Positions 5,276 through 50,677 of a DNA stretch of 51,468 nt are shown here, piece after piece (positions within the stretch are counted from its first letter, which is position 1; each line of letters begins with the position of its first letter). The translations under genes and the position numbers were made by a program. The DNA comes from Prasinococcaceae sp. CCMP 1430 (Eukaryota; Plantae; Prasinodermophyta), in contig RQSC01000019.1 of assembly GCA_013416795.1 (NCBI GenBank), positions 277,654-329,121 on the forward strand. Reading direction: 5' to 3'. The notes under the pieces are model-generated. The model had not been told where the DNA came from. It did no database searches and saw only the letters and a list, made by a program, of their open reading frames with translations.

Positions 5276-6922
5276 TCACTGCGCCTCCGCGCCGCCGTGC
5301 ACCGGGTTTCCCGATGGCCCCATCGACATTGTCCGCGCAAATTGCACGAAGCTGACCCATGCGTCGGGTTTGAATAGCCCTTCCCCCATGCGCAGGAAGG
5401 TCATGGAGCTCATCCTACCCGCGCCACCGGCAGCGGGTCGATAGGCGTTCTGTACCATCTGCGTGTGGGCGTGCGCGTCGTAGCGAGGCAGCGCGTTCTC
5501 GCCGCTGACCTCGACGCCGCAGCGCGCGGCAGCCGAGCACACCTGCTCGAGCAGTCGCTCGGGCGATGAGTGAGCCTCTTGCGGCTGCTCGACGTCGCGC
5601 ATCTCCGCGCAGGTGAAGCTCACGCCGAAGCTGTGCCTTGCAAGCATCTCCAGCACGGGCGTGTAGCCATCCCTCTCACAGGTGTTGTAGAATCCCGCCG
5701 TGAGCTCGGCAGCATGCGCACACGAGTCGTACATCCAGTGTATGCCCGGCAGCTTGGCGTTGAGCCGCACCCCGCTGCCCGCGAACGCCTCGCTCGCCGC
5801 GCTCGCCACGCGCTCGCCGTGCGCGATGAGCGCGCCGCTGTACCAGTCGAGGAACCAATGCCCGTACGGCGTGCGCCAGCTGCCGTGAGCTTCGTCGGTG
5901 AAGAAGTCAGTCTCCCATGGCCGAGAGTTGTACCGGCCCGCATTGTGCGGCCCGCCGTGCCCCCACTTGGGCACACCGTCGAGCTCCGCGCACGCCTCCA
6001 GCGTGCTCAGCATGTACTTGTCGTAGCACTGGAACTCGCCAACGCCCGGGAAGGACCAGCGCGTGTCGCCCTGCGGATACGAGGGGAAGCGCATTTCACC
6101 CGCGGGGCCCATGCCCACGCTCACCTCTTGTATTGTGCCGCTTTCGCCCAGGTAGTCCGCGAACGCGTGCCGGAACGAAGCGCAAAAGTCGGCGTAAACG
6201 TGCACGGGCGTGCGCCCTCGCAGCAGCGGCAGCTCGTCCACGGCGAAGCTGAGGTACTCGCAGTTGCGAGCGCCCTCGCGGTCGGTGAAGAGTATGTCCG
6301 GATTCGCCTCCGCCTCCTCCAACACCCACAGCGGCAGGCTCACCAGGCAGCAATCGTTGACGTTGCCGCCGCACGCGTGGAAGCTCATCACGCACTGCAA
6401 CTTCAGGCCCGCCTCCGTCACCAGCTCGGCGAGCTCGAGGTAGGCGGACCAGTCGTAGACGCCAGGCTCATCGCGCTCCACGACGCCCCACCACACGTCC
6501 ACCATCACCCCTTCGACGCCCACGCTGCGCAGGGCGCGCAGGCCCGCAGCGAGCGCGCGTTTGTAGTTGAGCGTGTTGTCGACGCCAACGGTGTCTAGCG
6601 GCAGCATCACGTTGACCGGCACTGGGCCGTCGGAGCGCGGCGAGGGACCGGCCGACTCGGGCTTTTCGGGGGGTTTCACGCGCGGGCGCTCGGGCGTGCG
6701 CGGTGCCGGCGACGCCAGCGGCGCCTTCAAGGGCGCCGCGGCCGCACCACTGAAGCCCATGCTGCTCAGGTCGAGCGCGTCTGCGATCGCGGCGGACGAG
6801 GTGGACGCCGAAGCCGAGGTGGCGCGCTTGGCGGCGTGCGTGCCGCTAGGAGACGCGTCTGGCGCCGGCGCCTGTTGCTGCACGCCCCGTCGCCGGACGG
6901 GGCAGCGGCCGGGCGCACTGCG
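5276..6922 (-). CDS. BAM: Beta-amylase (GH14); 5' end in the gap at 6923-7247
   Basis: VMLPLDTV, GVMVDVWWGVVE, SFHACGGNVND, and both catalytic Glu motifs (GPAGEMRFPSYP and SGENALPRYD). Confidence 0.95.
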   Translation of the reverse strand, partial: RSAPGRCPVRRRGVQQQAPAPDASPSGTHAAKRATSASASTSSAAIADALDLSSMGFSGAAAAPLKAPLASPAPRTPERPRVKPPEKPESAGPSPRSDGPVPVNVMLPLDTVGVDNTLNYKRALAAGLRALRSVGVEGVMVDVWWGVVERDEPGVYDWSAYLELAELVTEAGLKLQCVMSFHACGGNVNDCCLVSLPLWVLEEAEANPDILFTDREGARNCEYLSFAVDELPLLRGRTPVHVYADFCASFRHAFADYLGESGTIQEVSVGMGPAGEMRFPSYPQGDTRWSFPGVGEFQCYDKYMLSTLEACAELDGVPKWGHGGPHNAGRYNSRPWETDFFTDEAHGSWRTPYGHWFLDWYSGALIAHGERVASAASEAFAGSGVRLNAKLPGIHWMYDSCAHAAELTAGFYNTCERDGYTPVLEMLARHSFGVSFTCAEMRDVEQPQEAHSSPERLLEQVCSAAARCGVEVSGENALPRYDAHAHTQMVQNAYRPAAGGAGRMSSMTFLRMGEGLFKPDAWVSFVQFARTMSMGPSGNPVHGGAEAQ

Positions 6923-7641
6923 NNNNNNNNNNNNNNNNNNNNNNNNNNNNNNNNNNNNNNNNNNNNNNNNNNNNNNNNNNNNNNNNNNNNNNNNNNNNNN
7001 NNNNNNNNNNNNNNNNNNNNNNNNNNNNNNNNNNNNNNNNNNNNNNNNNNNNNNNNNNNNNNNNNNNNNNNNNNNNNNNNNNNNNNNNNNNNNNNNNNNN
7101 NNNNNNNNNNNNNNNNNNNNNNNNNNNNNNNNNNNNNNNNNNNNNNNNNNNNNNNNNNNNNNNNNNNNNNNNNNNNNNNNNNNNNNNNNNNNNNNNNNNN
7201 NNNNNNNNNNNNNNNNNNNNNNNNNNNNNNNNNNNNNNNNNNNNNNNCGCGGCCGCGGCCGGCGGCGCGCGGCCGCGAATCCGACGCCCGGAAGATCAAA
7301 ATCAAATCGTCGGCGGGGGCGCGCGCGCGGCCGCGGCCCGCAGCAGCGGCAATTCCGCCACACCAAAACCGGGAATGGCAGGAAAGAGAAAGAGGGGAAG
7401 GCCACCCACGGGAGCCCAGCCAGTCGTACTGCACTTTCCCCCCGCGAACGATCCCGCTGCGCGCCGCGCCCGCCGCGGCCGCGTCGGCGACGCGCCAGCC
7501 TTCCTCTTTCGCCTTTCGCCATTTTCTGTCTGTCGCCTCGCTCCTTCTTCCCTTGCTGGCTGGTTTGCTTGGTGGTGTCCTCGGCCGAAGCGCGCGGCCG
7601 CCGCACGTTCCTGGCCATTCAATCAAAATCAATCCAACGGC

Positions 7642-34875: not shown

Positions 34876-35013
34876 TGGGGGGGGGGGGTGCTTTGCACGC
34901 ATATTGGGAGGCGCATTCTCACCCAGCAGGTCATCGTCGCCGCGGATAACACCTACGCACATAGTGGTACACACGTGAAGGGGCATCCACCCTCGAGATT
35001 TTTACGGCCGGCT

Positions 35014-36874
35014 TCAGTACGCCTATTTCAGGCCGCGCCGAGAGCGTGGCAGCGCGGCCAGTTCTGTCAGCGTTGGACTTGCACCTTGGTGCGACACAGC
35101 TAGGGGGGCGCTCGCGCGAAGCGCACAAGAGGCAGCGCATGCAAGCGTCGAGCTGAAAGAGTCGTGCTTTCAGCGGTCCGGGGCCGCTGACACAACGTAC
35201 CTTGGCGAAGATGGCCGTCTCGGCGCCGGCTGCGCCCGTCACGATGCACGCACCGCGCTCATCCGCTGGCGGTTGCTCCAGCGGGAAGCAGCGGAGCGTC
35301 GCTCCAGTCTCCTCCTTCAGGCGCTTCTCGTCTTCGTCGGACCCATCCCACGCGCAGCGCACCCACTTCCCCTCCGCGATGGCCGCCTTGAACTCCTCTT
35401 CGCTGGTGACGTCCTCGATGTTGGAGTCGCGGAATGCTGTGGCGTCCGTCAACATCTGCGCCTGGATGTCTGCCATGAGCTCTTCGACGTGCGCCACCAG
35501 CGCACCCGCCTCCCACGAGACCCCGAAGGTCTTGCCCTCCTTGCCTGGCCTGTCGCGGCGCGCCACCACCACCGCCTCCTTCTCCACGTCCTTGGGCCCC
35601 ACTTCGATGCGCACAGGCACGCCGCGCATCTCGTACTGGTTGAATTTCCAACCGGGGCGCTCCTTCTCCGAGGCGTCCATGTCCACGCGCACGCCCGCGG
35701 CCTTCAGCTTGTCGGTGACGTCCGTGGCGGCCGCCACGACTGCCTCGCGCTGCTTCTCCTTCTGCCAGATGGGCACGACCACCACCTGCGTGGGCGCGAT
35801 GGAGGGCGGCAGGCGCAGCCCCGTGTCGTCGCCGTGGGTCATGATGAGCCCGCCAACCATGCGCGTGGAGACGCCCCACGAGGTCTGGTACACGTGGCGC
35901 TGCTCGCCCTCCTCGTCCAGGAACTGCGTGCCGAAAGCCTTGGCGAAGTTCTGGCCGAGGTTGTGCGAGGTGCCCGCCTGCAGCGCCTTGCGGTCGCCCA
36001 TCATGGCCTCGATGGTGTACGTGTGCTCGGCGCCAGCGAACTTCTCGATTCGGCTCTTGCGGCCGCAGATGACGGGCATGGCCAGCACTCCCTCGGCGAG
36101 CTCGCGGTAGACCTCGAGCATCTGCAGCGTCTCGGCCTCGGCCTCCTCGGCCGTGGCGTGCGCGGTGTGGCCCTCCTGCCAGAGGAACTCGAGCGTGCGC
36201 ACGAAGGGCCGCGTGCGCATCTCCCAGCGCACCACATTGGCCCACTGGTTGACCAGGAGCGGCAGGTCGCGGTACGAGCTCACCCACTGCGAGAACATGT
36301 GGTTCACGATGGTCTCGGAGGTGGGGCGCACCACCAGGGGCTCCTCGAGCTCCTTGCCGCCTCCCTGCGTCACCAGCGCGAGCTCCGGCGCGAAGCCCTC
36401 CACGTGGTCGGCCTCCTTGGCGATGAACGAGTACGGGATGAAGCTGGGGAAATACGCGTTCTTGTGACCGGTCTCCTTGAACCTCGCGTCAAGGAACGAC
36501 TGGATGCCCTCCCACAGCGCGTACCCGTAGGGCCGGATGACCATCGTCCCGCGCACGGGGCCGTAGTCGGCGAGCTCGGCGGTCTTGATGAGGTCGAGGT
36601 ACCACGCCGAGAAGTCCTCCGAGCGCGGCGTGATGCCACCCTCGCCCTTTCCCAGCTTCTTCTCGCCCTTCCCCTTGGCCTTGCCCGCGGCGGCATCGCC
36701 TCCCTTGCCGCCCGCGCCGGCCGCCTCGGTGGCGACCGCCGCGGCCGCGNACGAGATGGCAGCACCCGCGACGAGGGTGGATGCAGTGGAGGCCGCCGCG
36801 GCGCGCGTGCAGTACGCGCTATGCACGCGCTCGGTGTGGCATCGATGCCCCAACACCAACTTTCGAGTTCTCAT
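35014..36874 (-). CDS. proS: Organellar prolyl-tRNA synthetase (eukaryote/archaeal-like type); join(~36874..35201,35022..35014), start uncertain (N at 36750)
   Basis: YGPVRGTMVIRPYG, VRPTSET, NVVRWEMRTRPFVRTLEFLWQEGHTAH, LQAGTSHNLGQNF, SWGVSTR. Intron 35200-35023 gives the terminal AK|AY*. Confidence 0.95.
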
Positions 36875-37270
36875 AGTCCGACAGTTCCTCCGGTGAGTGA
36901 GAGGAGATATCATGGATGGAATCCGAATCCTGGTCAAAGTGAGACAGAAAAAACGCGCGAGCAAGCGAAGCGCTTACTATCCCGTTGGCTTGATCGCTTG
37001 CAAACGCCAGTGCTTGCTCGGGCGCGAACGGTCGCGACAACCCTACAAACGGCAACTCCGATCTCAAATTTTAGTGTTCACCATGCGCACGCGCACAACA
37101 CCATGCATGTTGATTGCGGCGCGTCTCGCCGGCGGCCATGATCAGGTGGTGCATGGTGGACCAGAGCGTTCCCGGTCTTTCGCGAATGCCTTTGACGTTT
37201 GAAATGCTTCGTGAGCGGCCGGCACCGAGCAGGACCGAAGGCGAAGACCATCATGTCATGTGCGCGCAGG

Positions 37271-45110: not shown

Positions 45111-45347
45111 CTATTTCGGAGCGCAACCCCCCTTTTTCCTGAACTTGCAGTTCGTCTTAGCGTCGCCTTTCCTGCACTTCTTCTTCGACTTGGCCTTCTT
45201 GCAAAGCTTCTTGACCTGCTTGGCGGAGAGCCTGGCCTTCTTGCGCTTCCTGGCCTTCTTCTTGGCCTCCTTCTTGGCCTCCTTCTTGGCCTTCTTCTTG
45301 GCCTTTTGGGACTCTTTCGACTCCTTGCTCTTCTCGCTCGTGGCCAC
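45111..45347 (-). CDS. Lys/Cys-rich coding exon downstream of the TEP stop; probably an alternative TEP C-terminus
   Basis: VATSEKSKESKESQKAKKKAKKEAKK...LCKKAKSKKKCRKGDAKTNCKFRKKGGCAPK*, with strong AAG/GAG/GCC codon bias. Preceded by canonical intron 45462-45348. No ATG of its own. Confidence 0.55.
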   Translation of the reverse strand: MATSEKSKESKESQKAKKKAKKEAKKEAKKKARKRKKARLSAKQVKKLCKKAKSKKKCRKGDAKTNCKFRKKGGCAPK

Positions 45348-45476
45348 CTTCGGATGGGGCAGGAAAGACAGGGACCACGGGCGCGCATGCAGCGTCAGCA
45401 CGCGGTGGTACGCCCCCCACACGTACAGTATGACTGTGTGCTGCCGCGGCGCGCGCGCTCACCTCACGCCCGGCGT

Positions 45477-48400
45477 CTACGGGCGAAGGAGCTGCGGCAC
45501 GGCGAGCGCGAGTGTCGTGCCCGCGAGCAACGCCAGGGGCGGGGCGACCGCCGCGGCGGCAGCGGGGCTGTCCGAGGCCTCTTCATCGTCCTCAACGACG
45601 ACGACCTTGCCATCCACACGCACCGGATTATCGATGATCACCTCACCGTGGGCGCTCTCCACGCTGTCCGCCCCCACGCTCCCCGCGCCCGCCAGCTCGG
45701 GCACGTAGTACGCGAACATGTCTGATGTGGCCGGAGCGAGGTCATGCACCGCCGCCGAACGCTCCGCGCGAAAGCTCAGACACGTTTCTTCCTGGCCCAC
45801 ACCGGCGAGGTAGATCTCGGCGCCACCCTCGGCCGCAGGATCGGCGCGCTTCACCACCGAGGGGGCGCTCGACGCCAGCGACGCCAGCGAGGCGGGGTCG
45901 GCAGCGTAGCCCGAAAAGACGCCCGCGCGCAGCAGCACCATGCCCGAATGCTCGGCCTGCGCCGCGTTTGGCGAGCTACCGTCAACGCTCGCACAGGCCG
46001 TCACCGAGAGCGCACCGCCAGCAGGCCTGGACGTGTCGTTGACGTATCTCATGCGCAGAGTGTACGTGGGTGCGATGGGCGGCGCTATGGTGTTGTAGCG
46101 CAGCGAGAGCTGCACCAGCGCAATGCCGTCGCCTGACCCAGACAGCGAGACCGAGCCGCCGGGGGAGACGCTCGCACGCTGCAGCACGAGCGCGTTTTCG
46201 CGGTTCACCTCGAAAGTGGCTGTTGCGGCAGTGCCGCCGTCGCTGGCGGTGATCCGCACTGTGCCCTGCGTAGCAGCCAGGGCAGCGGCGTACTCCGAAA
46301 GCGCCTCGAGTGCCACCACAGTGTCCTGCGTTGAAGAGAAGCCACCCTGTGAGTTGCGCTGTGCGAGCAGCCACCGCGCGGCGGGCGCCGCATCCGCGGC
46401 GCGCCCCGCCGCCAGCAATGCCTGCAGCGCGTAACCCGTTGCTTCGACCTCCGACGAGCTCGAGTGCGGGGCATAGGGCAGGGCGTCTGCCGCGAAGAGA
46501 TCAAATGTCGGGGCACTGCCGGTGGGCCAGTACGCCGTGCCGCTGTCGCCGGCGACAGAAGCGGCCAGGAGCGTGTTCACGGCGTCGTCGACGATGCCCG
46601 ATGGGCACGACTCAACGGCCGTGTCCGCGTTCGCACACGCCTTGACGAGCGCGGCGCAGGCAATGGTGAGCGGGTAGCCCGTGAGCCGGTTCAAAGCGTC
46701 GGCCAGCACATCGACTGCGGCCTCAGCGGCAGCCCCTGCCGCGTTGCGCAGCGAGGGGATGCGGCGCGCCTCAGCAAGGGCTGTCAGAACGAAAGCGGTG
46801 AGCGCATCGCCTGGGTTCGCCGCCCCGCCCTGCATCTCAGTGTGGATCACGTCGCCCACCTCGTCAAAGTGGCCGTCGCGCTCCTGGGTGTTTGCGAGGA
46901 AGGCCGAGGCCTGCGAGAGCACGCCGGTGTCCACCGCGATGAACTCGTATGGCTCGGCGGCCGCCTGCGCGAAGACCTTGAGCACGAACGCCGTCAGCCA
47001 TGTCGACGCAGACTGGTCCTGCGTGCCGAAAGCAGAGAAGCCGCCATCGGGGTGGCGGTAGTTGAGCTCGCGCTGGTATCCCACCATCATGTTGCTCACT
47101 GCGCGCGTCTCGGTGTCCGAGTCAAGCTTGTTGACCGCGCTGAGGTAGCTGGCGACGTACACGTTGGGCGCTAGCCCGATCATGTTCTGCTCGCCGCAGC
47201 CGGATGGCATGCGCAGCAGTGACTCGAGGCCCTGCAAAGTGGGGCCCATCACGTCGCCTACCACGCTCAGGTAGGCGCGCGCAGAGCCTTCAACGACGTC
47301 GCCTGGCAAAGACGCATCGAACGTGTACTCTGTAGAGGCGTCTGCGTTGGCCTCATCGCGCAAGTCTATGAGCACGTTCTGCACGGTCTCGCGTTCGAAG
47401 CCCTCCGCGCGCACGACAACTGCGCGCGTGACTGCGTCGGAGAGTCCCACAGCCGCCGGCGTCGTTGCCTGTAGCGAGAGGCCCACCGCCCCAAGCTCGG
47501 TGAAGCGCACGAGCAGCTCGATGGCTGCCGAGCCACCGGCAGGCAGTTCGAGCGCCCCGCCATCGGGAAACCCTGCGACAACCTCCACGCCAGGCGAGTC
47601 GCGCAGCGCCAGCGTGACGGCGATGTCCTCGGCTCCGTAATTGTACACGCCGACGGGGACGGTGAGCGCCTCGCCCCGCACAACGCTGTACGGCAGTCGC
47701 GGCGAGAGGAACAACTCTTTCTTGACCACCAGCTCAGCCGAGGCTACGCCAGCGGTCGCAGCGACGCCCAGCCCGACATCAGGGGCCGACGCGAAGGCGC
47801 TCAGCTCCCACGTCGTGATGGAGTCCGGGGCGGACTGCGCCAGCGACAGAGCGCCATCGGTTCCCACGTCTGCGCTCATCCACACCCATGACTCCGGAAA
47901 GAACTTGCGCACGCGCTTGACCGAAGTCTGCGCGGCACCTGTACTCTTGCCGGCACTTTCCTCGGCCCCAGCGGTTGTAGCCTGGGGTGCACCTTCGTCG
48001 AAGGCGACGTCCGCGGCGCCGTCGGCGAAGGCGGCGCGCTCAATGGCAGCGACGGGCATAGCCTCAGCCACTTCAGCGTCGTCAAAGAGGTATCCGAAAT
48101 ACCCGCCCCCGCTGTACGAATTCAGCTGGCACTCGGTAACGACTGTGGTCTCTGGAGCCGCCAGCGAAACGCCTGCCTGTGCGAGCACCGACGTCGCCCA
48201 ACGCCGCGCGCAGCTGGGGCGGCTGGGCAGCTCCGCCGCGCCAGTCTGCGCCTCAAGCACGCGCTCGGCGGTGAGCGCCGAGCTTCCACCAAGCAGGCTC
48301 ACTGCGCGGTCTACGGCCAGTACAAAGGCACGCGCGCCCGGCGCCGCCTCAACATTGATCGCTATGCGCTCCCCGGGGCGCGCCACGCTCGTGTTGAATG

Positions 48401-50439
48401 AGGCCGCAGCGCTGTGGGCCCCATCGACCGCAGCGGCAGTCACGTCGAACGCCATTTCGTCAGCAACGAGCTCGCCGTCGGGTCCTGCGTACACCGCCAG
48501 CAACGAGCTGGAGGGCGCCATGGCATCAGTGGCGACGAAGCTGATCATGGTGGCGGTGGCACTGGCGGCGGTGGCAGCACCGGCGGCGACCACGCCTCCC
48601 TTGGCTGCCACGACAAAGTACGACACGTCAGCAGTTCCAGCGGCCGTGGAATAGAGCGCGGAGACACTGAACGTCTCACCCGAGGGCACTGTCGCACCGC
48701 CAGCGATGTCGTGCGACGTCGCCGCTAGCAGCAGACCGCTGCCCGACACCGACAGCGCGCGGGAGGAACTAGTGCTGGCGTACACACCGCTGACGGAGCT
48801 TTCCAAGTAAAATCTCGCGCGCGTGTAGCAGCACCCACGAGCGACAGGCTCGGTGCCGCTGCCACTGCCGTATGGCCACGCGGCCCCCTCTTCAACCCCC
48901 TCCCCGGCCGTCGTGTCGTAAACACAAGTCGCCGAGTCGTCAGGCGCCTCAAAAGTCAGCGTCGCGCTTCCGTCGGCGGCCGTTCGCACTGTCCCGGAGA
49001 CCTCCACGCTTTGCGTGCGCTGGCACGTACGCCAGTCGTAGTCCTGCGAGAACGCGCCGCGAATGGTCAACCGTTCGCCGACGTGACCACCACCGCCCGC
49101 GGCCGTGGCCAAAACAGACACGCTCACTGGCACCCCCGGCGAAAAGTGGCGGTCGGCGGAGAGCTCCACACTGTAGGCGTTGCGCTTGGCGTCCACGTTG
49201 GCGCTCGCCTGTGCCACGGCACCAGTTGCAGCCTCAGTGACCTGAGCCTCGACGATGAGCGGGTTGCCGCTGTCAAATATGCTGTCGTACGCCTCGGCAC
49301 CCGCGGCGGTGAGCGCGAGCTCGAGCTGCGCACTGCCGTCAATGGCGCCCTCGAACGTCGCGATGAGCGTACCAACGGCGCCATTTGACCTTGTCGACGT
49401 GCCGCCGACGTCGCTCCCGACGCCTTTCTCTGCGAATTCCGGGAAGCCGCCCCAGTAGTGGTAGTAGCTCTCGTCGGCGTACACGCTCACAGACACCGTG
49501 CCCTCGACGGGCTCGCCGTAGGTGTACGTGGCGCTAACAGTACCGTCAAGCGTCTGATCGCCCTTCACAACGGCAGCAGCGAGGTCGAGGTCGACCTCAA
49601 ATTTGGGCAGCACGTACTCGTCCACAGAGAATTTGGCTGACGCCGACGAACCGGACTCTGGAGCCTATGTGCGCACGCGTGATGGCGGGCGCAACTCGCG
49701 CTTGCAGCGTCAGACTCGCGCACGCACATCCATAACCCAGCCTGCGCGCACGCCCTCAGTCCACACGCACCTCAACGTCGACGGTGTAGATGCCGAGCGC
49801 GGGCTCGGCAGCCGTGGGCAACACGATCTCAACGGCGCCTACCAGGTCGGCATTGCGTACCCAGCGAGCAATGATGACGCCGTCTGGGTTCGAGACGGTC
49901 ACGTGAATCTCCTCACCGGCACCAACCGGCACGAGCGCGGCATCCATAGCGAGCGCGCGAATGCGCACGCTTTGACCGGGCTTGTACACGGGCTTGTCTA
50001 TCTCGATGAGCACGATGGGCGACGCCGGCTCGAGCACAGTGATGGTCGCGTGCACGTCATCAGCACCGGGTGCGGTGGCGATGAGCTCAAAGTTGCCCGC
50101 GGGGAGGTTCGCTGGGAATTCCAGACTACGGAGATCAGGCGCGATCCCGCCACCCCACGTGACCTCCCACGTCGCGCTTGGCGTCGGTGCGTCGTCGCCT
50201 TCCCCGTCGTCGGTGTCTGTGTACAGCCTGAGCAAGATCCGGGTCTCGACGGCTTCCACCGCCCCGAGGGTGCCGAGCGCGGGCGCGACGGCGATGCCCG
50301 CGCGTTCGCCAGCGCGCACGTGTGAGGGTGCGACCACCATAAATCGCGCGGGAGCGGCCTCGGCGGCGAGCGCCGCCAGCGCCGCCGCGTTGACCGCGAG
50401 CGACGCCGCCGCGATGGCGATCCACGCATCCGCGGCCAT
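45477..50439 (-). CDS. Thioester-containing protein, alpha-2-macroglobulin/CD109/TEP family; join(50439..49771,49664..45477), ~1618 aa
   Basis: Signal peptide, DKPVYKPGQSV, FSVDEYVLPKFEV, RKFFPESWVW, PDSITTW, LPYSVVRGE, LRMPSGCGEQNM, HPDGGFSAFG, VIHTEMQGG, GGFSSTQDTVVALEALSEY, YYVPE, hydrophobic tail. 106-bp phase-0 intron. Confidence 0.93.
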
Positions 50440-50677
50440 GGCGGCGGCCCGCGCCGCTCTGGCGCCGCGCCCCTTCCCCCGGCGACGCGCGCGCACTACG
50501 TACTGTTAAGCGTGGGTCGGAGAATATGCTCGATAATCTTTCCGAAATCCTTCCAAAATACGATTTATGGCGCTGGTAAATATATAAGATAAGACTTATA
50601 CCCACAAAACGACGGAGTTTTAATGCGCCGCCCGGCCTGCACTTCCTTCCATCAAGTGCGCTCCGCCCCTGCCTACT

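What the first reader, a model, noticed from the sequence alone, without database searches (positions are those of the whole stretch)
45477..50439. Animal-type thioester protein (A2M/CD109/TEP) with an intact GCGEQ motif in a green alga
Seen: a complete ~1618-aa secreted protein with MG domains, a bait-like region, the thioester LRMPSGCGEQNMIGLAPN (47201-47181), a TED domain and an RBD-like tail. Established: EYVLPKFEV, FPE.W.W, GCGEQNM and GGF.STQDTVVAL.AL are hallmarks of metazoan innate-immunity TEPs (complement C3, A2M, CD109, insect TEP), and land plants and model chlorophytes are not known for them. Inference: a complement-like covalent tagging or defence protein at an algal cell surface (against proteases, bacteria, viruses or grazers), from HGT or ancient retention. 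It has an intron in host style, so it looks domesticated rather than contaminant.
Basis: partly seen in the sequence, partly recalled or inferred. Interest (0 to 1): 0.92.

Follow-up and report, generated by a model that had tools for sequence, protein, structure and literature searches.

The report
Thioester defence protein in green alga
This green alga has an intact, expressed gene for a thioester protein of the kind animals use to trap proteases and tag microbes; it belongs to a so far undescribed branch of that family shared by several marine algae and other protists, so the family is older and wider than the animal-plus-bacteria picture in reviews.

Summary
On the minus strand, 50439-45477, lies a 1618-aa secreted protein with MG2, MG3, bait-region domain, A2M, TED and receptor-binding domains, an intact GCGEQ thioester and the C3-type catalytic histidine. 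It has one 106-nt coding intron. Marine metatranscriptome contigs show the gene spliced.

It is a host nuclear gene. It shares the neighbours' GC content and sits among eukaryotic genes, including a Viridiplantae-type ProRS.

It is not animal-derived. In a careful tree it falls in a fully supported microbial-eukaryote clade. Its closest kin are other prasinophyte-grade green algae (Cymbomonas, Pyramimonas), then uncultured picoeukaryotes and dinoflagellates. This clade is separate from Metazoa, from choanoflagellates and from a large Chloroflexota/Actinomycetota clade with the same architecture. It is far from E. coli YfhM.

The closest solved structure is native human CD109.

Alternative splicing gives two C-termini, and a related alga has both forms too. 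One is a hydrophobic GPI-like tail. The other is a 78-aa Lys/Cys-rich tail.

Most likely it is a surface-tethered, bait-triggered protease trap and covalent tagger. That function is inferred, not shown.

I found no paper on algal or protist TEPs. I rate it a new member of a known kind, of moderately high interest.

The parts
45477..50439 (-). TEP gene, isoform A coding span (ATG 50439 to stop 45477-45479); 1618 aa
49771..50439 (-). Coding exon 1 (223 aa). Holds the signal-peptide-like N-terminus (about residues 1-28; hydrophobic core at residues 5-27), MG1 and the MG2 domain (49774-50001).
49665..49770 (-). Intron 1, 106 nt, GTGCGT...ATAG, phase 0
   Evidence: A metatranscriptome contig skips it. 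The intron-less relative's transcript aligns across the junction.
49476..49619 (-). MG3 domain, with the EYVLPKFEV motif just upstream
48291..48689 (-). A2M bait-region domain (MG6 scaffold)
47934..48176 (-). Bait-like region, about residues 720-800. It is predicted disordered and is the most divergent, indel-rich stretch against the orthologue.
   Evidence: pLDDT is below 50 at model residues 302-380. Identity to P0002 is 0.28-0.33 with gaps in 20-38% of positions.
47607..47891 (-). A2M domain, starting at the conserved RVRKFFPESWVW motif
46290..47267 (-). Thioester domain (TED_complement)
   Evidence: 1.7e-77; all-helical in the model
47187..47201 (-). GCGEQ thioester motif (Cys1046, Gln1049)
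   Evidence: The G, C, G, E and Q columns are invariant in the 39-sequence alignment.
46842..46844 (-). His1164, which aligns with the catalytic His1126 of human C3
   Evidence: HMMER alignment to C3d and C3 chains; conserved in all 36 clade members
45696..45950 (-). A2M receptor-binding domain (MG8)
45480..45563 (-). Isoform A C-terminal hydrophobic, GPI-signal-like tail (residues 1591-1618). It follows an acidic Ser/Asp-rich stretch.
   Evidence: Hydropathy. Similar tails occur in most clade members and in animal CD109.
45348..45462 (-). 3'-UTR intron of isoform A (GTGAGC...GAAG), 115 nt
   Evidence: Contig joints in three RNA runs of one study; splice sites read.
45348..45623 (-). Alternative intron of isoform B. 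The donor is CCG|GTGCGT after residue 1570 and the acceptor is the same as in isoform A. It removes the last 48 aa, including the hydrophobic tail.
   Evidence: Contig joints in two RNA runs, on short contigs with 26 nt on the shorter side; sequence read.
45111..45347 (-). Alternative last coding exon: a 78-aa Lys/Cys-rich tail plus stop (isoform B, 1648 aa)
   Evidence: It is in frame. The related alga conserves it as an ORF after its stop codon and has a full-length isoform carrying it (P0134).

Best explanation
A nuclear gene of a GC-rich green alga encodes a monomeric, CD109-like thioester-containing protein (TEP) that is exported to the cell surface.

Shown:
- The full TEP domain set.
- An intact GCGEQ thioester motif.
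- The C3-type catalytic histidine.
- A disordered, fast-evolving bait region.
- A signal peptide.
- Splicing and transcription in the sea.
- Two alternatively spliced C-termini, also present in a related alga.

Inferred mechanism:
1. The protein folds with the Cys1046-Gln1049 thioester buried.
2. A foreign protease (from an algicidal bacterium, a grazer or a parasite) or an endogenous one cuts the bait region, about residues 720-800.
3. The molecule rearranges and exposes the thioester.
4. With help from His1164, the thioester reacts with hydroxyl or amino groups within reach. This links the TEP covalently to the protease, inhibiting it sterically, or to a nearby microbial surface.
5. Isoform A would keep the reaction at the plasma membrane through a GPI-type or tail anchor.
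6. Isoform B swaps that tail for a strongly basic Cys-containing tail, which would hold it on anionic wall or mucilage polymers or on microbial surfaces.
7. I saw no polybasic furin-type site ahead of MG8, unlike CD109. The complex would therefore stay tethered rather than be shed.

Evolution: the gene belongs to an old microbial-eukaryote TEP clade. It is not a recent import from animals or bacteria.
For: - Architecture and motifs.
- Closest solved relatives by sequence: human CD109 (1.1e-119), then A2M and A2ML1. No bacterial A2M (ECAM or Salmonella type) appears among the 60 rows shown, out of 66 matches.
- Closest fold: the AlphaFold2 model of residues 419-1618 (pLDDT 76.8) best matches native human CD109 8s3o, and matches native forms better than activated ones.
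- His1164 aligns with C3 His1126.
- The bait region is disordered and hypervariable.
- There are only two hydrophobic segments, at the N-terminus and the extreme C-terminus.
- Hydrophobic C-terminal tails recur across the clade and in animal CD109 and insect TEPs.
- Splice joints appear in marine metatranscriptome contigs.
- A relative has full-length forms of both isoforms, P0002 and P0134.
- Against a 99.2%-identical Tara strain there are 23 synonymous and 11 non-synonymous differences. This suggests purifying selection.
- Host context: GC content like the neighbours', flanking PQ-loop and UAA-transporter genes, and a Viridiplantae-type ProRS.
- Phylogeny: each of the four groups has 100% bootstrap support, and the green-algal subclade has 99/98.
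- CD109 mechanism: PMC12927315.
Against: - No biochemical evidence exists for thioester formation, bait cleavage, a GPI anchor or any target.
- The GPI signal is judged by pattern only. The tail could equally be a plain C-terminal membrane anchor.
- Isoform B rests on short junction contigs from two runs of one study, plus the relative's transcript.
- The catalytic His fits surface tagging (C3/C4B chemistry) as well as protease trapping.
- Expression evidence comes from environmental strains about 99% identical, not from this strain. Assembled contigs cannot give expression levels.
Confidence: 0.6

Rival explanations
1. Opsonin or complement-like tagger. The main job would be covalent marking or agglutination of bacteria or other particles, not protease inhibition. 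The marking might serve capture, uptake or exclusion.
For: - The C3-type catalytic His, which permits ester bonds to surface carbohydrates, is conserved in all 36 clade members.
- Named clade members and neighbours are largely particle feeders by general knowledge, which I did not test here: Cymbomonas, Pyramimonas, dinoflagellates and choanoflagellates.
- The polybasic tail of isoform B could bind anionic microbial surfaces.
Against: - There is no anaphylatoxin or C345C/NTR domain.
- The closest solved relatives are the protease inhibitors CD109, A2M and A2ML1.
- No convertase or receptor partner is known here.
- I know of no report of this alga feeding on particles.
Confidence: 0.2
2. Housekeeping regulator of the alga's own extracellular proteolysis or matrix. 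Possible roles are wall or mucilage remodelling, colony cohesion or signalling. It would have no defence role, much as CD109 also acts in signalling.
For: - Two conserved modes of surface or matrix attachment.
- Purifying selection.
- The gene appears in RNA contigs from several marine samples without any known challenge.
Against: - The bait region evolves fastest and with indels, as expected under pressure from foreign proteases.
- The family is patchy among green algae, which is unusual for a core wall function.
Confidence: 0.12
3. Contaminant, or recent horizontal transfer from an animal or a bacterium.
For: - Identity to metazoan CD109 (33-36%) is similar to identity to Chloroflexota/Actinomycetota proteins (34-37%).
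- The family is patchy in eukaryotes.
Against: - Spliced introns are confirmed by RNA.
- GC content and neighbours match the host.
- A 99.2%-identical genomic scaffold, with the intron, occurs in a Tara metagenome.
- The tree puts the gene with other green algae. Metazoa, choanoflagellates and bacteria are each excluded at 100% bootstrap.
- No relatives were found in viral contigs.
Confidence: 0.03

Closest known systems
Human CD109 (GPI-anchored monomeric alpha-macroglobulin protease inhibitor; PDB 8s3o, 9fx2/9fx3)
   Same: - Best sequence match in the PDB (1.1e-119) and best fold match.
- Same domain order, without anaphylatoxin or C345C domains.
- A GCGEQ thioester and a bait region.
- A C-terminal hydrophobic signal directly after MG8.
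   Different: - It sits in a separate clade rather than the metazoan CD109 group.
- Identity over the aligned part is about 26-36%.
- I saw no polybasic furin-type site before MG8 (read from the sequence).
- It is about 170 aa longer.
- It has an alternatively spliced polybasic tail.
Insect and invertebrate TEPs (Anopheles TEP1; iTEP, CD109-like)
   Same: Same architecture, thioester and catalytic His. Many also have hydrophobic C-tails.
   Different: They lie in the Metazoa clade. TEP1 is a soluble haemolymph opsonin that works with LRIM1/APL1C partners (my knowledge, not tested here).
Complement C3/C4
   Same: The TED, with its thioester and the catalytic His (His1164 aligns with C3 His1126).
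   Different: No ANA or C345C/NTR domain. Sequence scores are much lower than for CD109 and A2M.
Bacterial A2M of the YfhM/ECAM type (E. coli b2520)
   Same: A large MG-domain protein with a CxEQ thioester, anchored at a membrane surface.
   Different: - BLASTP aligns only about 90 residues around the thioester.
- It forms a very long branch of 3.4 changes per column.
- The motif is CLEQ, not CGEQ.
- It is absent from the 60 PDB rows shown, of 66 matches.
- It sits next to pbpC in E. coli.
Eukaryote-architecture TEPs of Chloroflexota/Actinomycetota (MAGs; 382 stretches found)
   Same: 34-37% identity over about 750 aa, with GCGEQ, His, and TED_complement plus A2M_recep domains.
   Different: - A separate clade with 100% support on a long stem.
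- Lipobox-like N-terminal signals were seen in five of the seven N-termini printed.
- None of the 15 examined has a C-terminal tail.
- They have no introns.

Membership tests
Thioester-containing protein / alpha-2-macroglobulin superfamily | Chain of macroglobulin domains with a bait-region domain | tested here: met
   Pfam finds MG2, MG3, A2M_BRD and A2M above cut-off. The model is beta-sandwich rich and aligns over 1100 columns to CD109.
Thioester-containing protein / alpha-2-macroglobulin superfamily | TED domain carrying the CGEQ thioester motif | tested here: met
   TED_complement at 1.7e-77. GCGEQ lies at residues 1045-1049 and is invariant in the alignment.
Thioester-containing protein / alpha-2-macroglobulin superfamily | C-terminal MG8 / receptor-binding domain | tested here: met
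   A2M_recep at 1.3e-10.
Thioester-containing protein / alpha-2-macroglobulin superfamily | A thioester bond that actually forms and reacts (methylamine-sensitive) | not testable with these tools
   This needs protein chemistry.
Metazoan CD109 orthogroup | Placement inside the metazoan CD109 clade | tested here: not met
   The careful tree puts it in a separate microbial-eukaryote clade. Metazoa are monophyletic at 100/99.
Metazoan CD109 orthogroup | GPI anchor | tested here: inconclusive
   The C-terminus runs small Ser/Asp residues, a spacer, then about 20 hydrophobic residues to the end. No GPI predictor or experiment was available.
Metazoan CD109 orthogroup | Furin site before MG8 that allows release after activation | tested here: not met
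   I saw no polybasic site between the TED and MG8 in the translated sequence. The CD109 feature is described in PMC12927315.
Complement C3/C4/C5 | Anaphylatoxin domain and C345C/NTR domain | tested here: not met
   Pfam reports neither, at E-values up to 0.01.
Complement C3/C4/C5 | Catalytic His that converts the thioester to an acyl-imidazole | tested here: met
   His1164 aligns with C3 His1126.
Bacterial YfhM/ECAM-type A2M | Close sequence kinship with YfhM, an N-terminal lipoprotein signal, and a bacterial gene setting (next to pbpC) | tested here: not met
   Only about 90 residues align with E. coli YfhM. The gene has spliced introns and eukaryotic neighbours. The E. coli yfhM-pbpC arrangement is shown.

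The most novel reading that the evidence does not exclude
Thioester-based covalent surface defence would not be an animal invention, with bacterial copies as a side story. Instead it would be an ancient eukaryotic system that survives in a distinct protist clade covering prasinophyte green algae, uncultured picoeukaryotes and dinoflagellates, with a sister set in choanoflagellates.

In this alga it would work as a real innate-immune effector against algicidal bacteria, parasites or grazers. Conserved alternative splicing would switch it between a membrane-anchored form and a matrix- or microbe-binding polybasic form.
Probability: 0.3. Interest if true: 0.85.

Novelty: new member of a known kind. 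Interest (0 to 1): 0.62.

Why it matters
Reviews up to 2026 describe thioester proteins as proteins of animals, with homologues in bacteria that may have been acquired from animal hosts (PMC13069473).

Here an intact, expressed, spliced TEP lies in a green-lineage nuclear genome. It has kin in other green algae, dinoflagellates and choanoflagellates, and there is a large separate clade in free-living Chloroflexota and Actinomycetota.

This moves the origin of the complement/A2M scaffold well before animals. It also weakens the 'bacteria took it from metazoan hosts' idea.

It gives phytoplankton biology a concrete candidate for surface defence against algicidal proteases or microbes. The conserved switch between a lipid-type tail and a polybasic tail is a testable way of placing the same effector on the membrane or in the wall.

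Tried and rejected
- **Contaminant or bacterial origin:** rejected. The evidence is RNA-confirmed introns, host-like GC content and neighbours, and the tree.
- **Transfer from animals:** rejected by the tree.
- **KRVRK before FFPESW as a furin-type processing site:** rejected. RVR.FFPETW.W is the family-wide consensus of the A2M domain start.
- **CAGE complex** (bioRxiv 2025.09.22.677704), which mentions macroglobulin-like domains in protists: a different family with no thioester.
- **Giant-virus vector:** no relatives in viral contigs. This search only finds close relatives.
- **Are the picoeukaryote contigs carrying P0146 and P0198 known Mamiellales?** Their genes look like those of a compact flagellate green alga (a rhodopsin-histidine-kinase, DAAF9, CFAP96), but the TEP has only environmental relatives and no named ones. 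The label stays a guess.
- **Literature:** six searches for algal, protist or choanoflagellate TEPs found nothing relevant. Subscription journals are not covered.
- **Technical failure:** a full-length L-INS-i alignment timed out and was replaced by FFT-NS-2.
- **Rooting:** with YfhM as outgroup the order of the three large groups has only 44-79 support, so the deep order is left open.
Full report
**1. What is in the sequence**

The minus strand between 50439 and 45477 carries one long gene.

- The ORF from 49625 down to 45477 already gives 1382 aa.
- The frame continues upstream to an AG acceptor at 49665. A second ORF (50496-49756) holds an ATG at 50439 and ends at a GTGCGT donor.
- Joining 50439-49771 to 49664-45477 removes a 106-nt phase-0 intron and yields 1618 aa without a stop.

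Pfam places six domains, all above the curated cut-offs: MG2 on exon 1, and MG3, A2M_BRD, A2M, TED_complement (1.7e-77) and A2M_recep on exon 2. No anaphylatoxin or NTR domain is reported. NCBIfam, a bacterial and archaeal library, gives only a sub-threshold squalene-cyclase hit in the TED.

GCGEQNM lies at 47201-47181 as stated.

**2. The gene model is backed by RNA and by a relative**

- A Tara Oceans metagenome scaffold (L001) is 99.2% identical over 4968 nt and includes the intron.
- Marine metatranscriptome runs hold much of the gene. One contig skips exactly the 106 nt, with GT..AG ends on the minus strand.
- A polyadenylated, intron-less transcript contig from a JGI data set (L002, protein P0002) is 57% identical over 1535 aa. 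It aligns straight across the exon junction.
- Between the window and the Tara strain the coding sequence differs at 23 synonymous and 11 non-synonymous sites. This suggests purifying selection.

**3. Two C-termini**

The same RNA contigs show two further joints that share one acceptor; the next exon starts at 45347.

- **Major form.** It keeps the stop at 45477 and removes a 115-nt intron from the 3' UTR (45462-45348). It was seen in three runs of one study.
- **Minor form.** It uses the donor CCG|GTGCGT after residue 1570, so the intron is 45623-45348. It was seen in two runs, on short contigs with only 26 nt on one side.

Isoform A ends in ...EEASDSPAAAAAVAPPLALLAGTTLALAVPQLLRP. This is the only hydrophobic stretch in the protein apart from the signal peptide.

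Isoform B replaces the last 48 aa with a 78-aa tail rich in Lys and holding several Cys.

The related alga has the same arrangement:
- an in-frame GTGAGT donor;
- the hydrophobic tail inside the optional intron;
- a conserved ...KKLCKKA.SKKKC... ORF after the stop.

Its transcript assemblies contain both full-length forms, P0002 and P0134. The switch is therefore conserved.

**4. It is a host gene of a green-lineage organism**

- GC content over the gene (0.63-0.67) is like the rest of the window (0.57-0.73).
- The flanking genes are eukaryotic: a PQ-loop (MPDU1-like) gene upstream and a UAA nucleotide-sugar transporter downstream.
- The window also carries a GH14 beta-amylase, Tdp1, ADAT-type deaminase, RED and a protein kinase.
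- Its ProRS is the Viridiplantae organellar type. The best named matches are Chlorella, Closterium, Tetraselmis, Chloropicon and land plants.

I could not verify the species name, only the green-lineage affinity.

**5. Relatives**

The word-indexed search found one 99% and one 67% environmental relative. Next came Pyramimonas transcriptome proteins at about 41-42%, other protist transcriptome proteins, many metazoan CD109/TEP/A2M proteins at 32-36%, and metagenomic or MAG proteins at about 36%.

The exhaustive representative search found 7302 cluster representatives at E-values up to 1e-3, and 1360 at up to 1e-30.

Cluster look-ups named these members:
- Pyramimonas obovata, whose protein UniRef A0A7S0R6R6 is auto-named 'Alpha-2-macroglobulin';
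- Cymbomonas tetramitiformis (KAK3238016.1, hypothetical protein);
- the dinoflagellates Gymnodinium smaydae and Polykrikos kofoidii;
- the choanoflagellates Salpingoeca urceolata and Diaphanoeca grandis.

Polarella glacialis was named directly in the homologue search.

Two further members (P0146, P0198) lie intron-less on 128-213 kb marine contigs. They show conserved synteny, and the contigs carry flagellar genes and a rhodopsin-histidine-kinase. This suggests an uncultured compact green flagellate, but no named relative exists.

A scan of one genome per bacterial and archaeal species found 382 encoding stretches. The best 80 come almost all from Chloroflexota and Actinomycetota MAGs, several of them closed chromosomes. 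All 80 have a thioester motif in a single uninterrupted ORF. Five of the seven N-termini I printed show a lipobox-like signal.

**6. Phylogeny**

A FastTree of 341 sequences (A2M-to-RBD region, 697 columns, E. coli YfhM as outgroup) gave these groups:
- a protist clade of 52 (support 98) that holds the window protein;
- a bacterial clade of 126 (support 96);
- a metazoan clade of 155 (support 98), with a small choanoflagellate clade beside it.

A careful IQ-TREE run used LG+C20+F+G4 by PMSF, with ultrafast bootstrap and SH-aLRT, on 78 sequences and 686 columns. It made each of the four groups one side of a branch, with support of 100/99 to 100/100 and in 100% of bootstrap trees.

Inside the protist clade:
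- The window protein joins its 68%-identical relative (100/100).
- These two join Cymbomonas and three Pyramimonas-type sequences (99/98).
- A 13-member set (99/93) adds the picoeukaryote contigs.
- Dinoflagellates fall in the other half.

The order of the large groups is not resolved (support 44-79). The tree excludes recent transfer from animals or from the sampled bacteria. It cannot decide between vertical descent with many losses and old transfers among protists.

**7. Features that bear on mechanism**

- All 36 members of the clade keep GCGEQ and the motif V-I-H-x-E/D-M-x-G-G.
- HMMER aligns this segment with human C3d and C3, so that His1164 matches C3 residue 1126. To my knowledge that is the histidine which turns the thioester into an acyl-imidazole able to esterify hydroxyl groups.
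- The stretch between the bait-region domain and the conserved RVRKFFPESWVW is the least conserved part against the orthologue: identity 0.28-0.33, with gaps in 20-38% of positions.
- That stretch is predicted disordered (pLDDT below 50, model residues 302-380) in an AlphaFold2 model of residues 419-1618 with mean pLDDT 76.8 and pTM 0.66.
- The model's best structural matches are native human CD109, native A2ML1 and native A2M. Activated forms fit worse.
- By sequence, CD109 is also the best solved relative (1.1e-119). No bacterial A2M appears among the 60 rows shown.
- Most clade members, like animal CD109 and several insect TEPs, end in a hydrophobic tail. The 15 bacterial ones examined end right after MG8. 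Two choanoflagellate proteins end in Lys/Arg/Cys-rich tails that recall isoform B.

**8. Most likely working**

CD109 is a monomeric alpha-macroglobulin. Bait cleavage triggers a conformational change that exposes the thioester, which then conjugates and so inhibits the protease at the cell surface (PMC12927315). The algal protein has every sequence requirement for the same cycle, so I take this as the best model.

It has two local twists:
- I saw no furin-type site before MG8, so the complex would stay tethered.
- A spliced choice exists between a lipid or tail anchor and a polybasic tail, which would bind anionic wall or mucilage polymers or microbial surfaces.

The catalytic His leaves C3-like tagging of carbohydrate surfaces open as the main rival. 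All functional steps are inferred.

**9. Novelty**

Six literature searches found no description of TEPs in algae, other protists or choanoflagellates. A 2026 review speaks only of metazoans and bacteria, and repeats the idea that bacteria took the gene from metazoan hosts.

The family and its mechanism are well known. What is new is the lineage, the distinct protist clade, the conserved anchor switch and the evolutionary implication. Automatic annotation of at least one orthologue already exists, which tempers the surprise.

Noticed in passing
L005-L084 (bacterial and archaeal genome contigs): A large monophyletic set of TEPs with the eukaryote-type architecture (TED_complement + A2M_recep, GCGEQ, catalytic His). 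They occur in free-living Chloroflexota (Dehalococcoidia, Chloroflexia, Anaerolineae) and Actinomycetota (Gaiellales/Thermoleophilia) MAGs, plus one Halobacteria-labelled MAG. Five of seven printed N-termini show a lipobox-like signal. In all, 382 stretches were found. This fits poorly with the idea that bacterial A2Ms belong to host-associated Gram-negatives.
   Followed up: partly
P0014, P0158, P0228 and kin (no loci): Choanoflagellates (Salpingoeca urceolata, Diaphanoeca grandis) have their own TEP clade beside Metazoa. Two members end in Lys/Arg/Cys-rich tails that recall isoform B of the algal protein.
   Followed up: partly
L086:2362-23831 and L087:3923-24042: Two uncultured marine picoeukaryote contigs share the gene order TIG protein - unknown gene - cyclophilin - TEP - large gene (a rhodopsin-histidine-kinase in L087) - L-type-lectin-like protein. 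The TEP there has no intron. No named relatives were found.
   Followed up: partly
window 45560 and 50362: Contigs of RNA runs X1 and X2 diverge from the window at these two points, with GC-rich loose ends of 17-48 nt. Both points lie in Ala-rich coding stretches: the C-terminal tail and the signal-peptide region. This may be strain variation or an assembly break.
   Followed up: no
window 50520-50640: A short AT-rich island lies in the roughly 230-nt gap between the upstream PQ-loop (MPDU1-like) gene and the TEP start codon. It probably holds the upstream gene's 3' end and the TEP promoter.
   Followed up: no
window 5276-7618 (-), 34931-36964 (-): A GH14 beta-amylase with a 330-aa N-terminal extension, and an organellar-type ProRS whose best named hit is Chlorella sorokiniana at 73%. 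Both fit a green-lineage genome.
   Followed up: partly
L003 (JGI contig Ga0372799_0093104, 179 kb): Another CD109-like TEP (P0026) lies on a long metagenome contig with eukaryote-looking genes: split ribosomal L18, an RTC-Methyltransf_16 fusion and a pectinacetylesterase. Many metagenome proteins labelled 'CD109 antigen' may therefore come from microbial eukaryotes.
   Followed up: no
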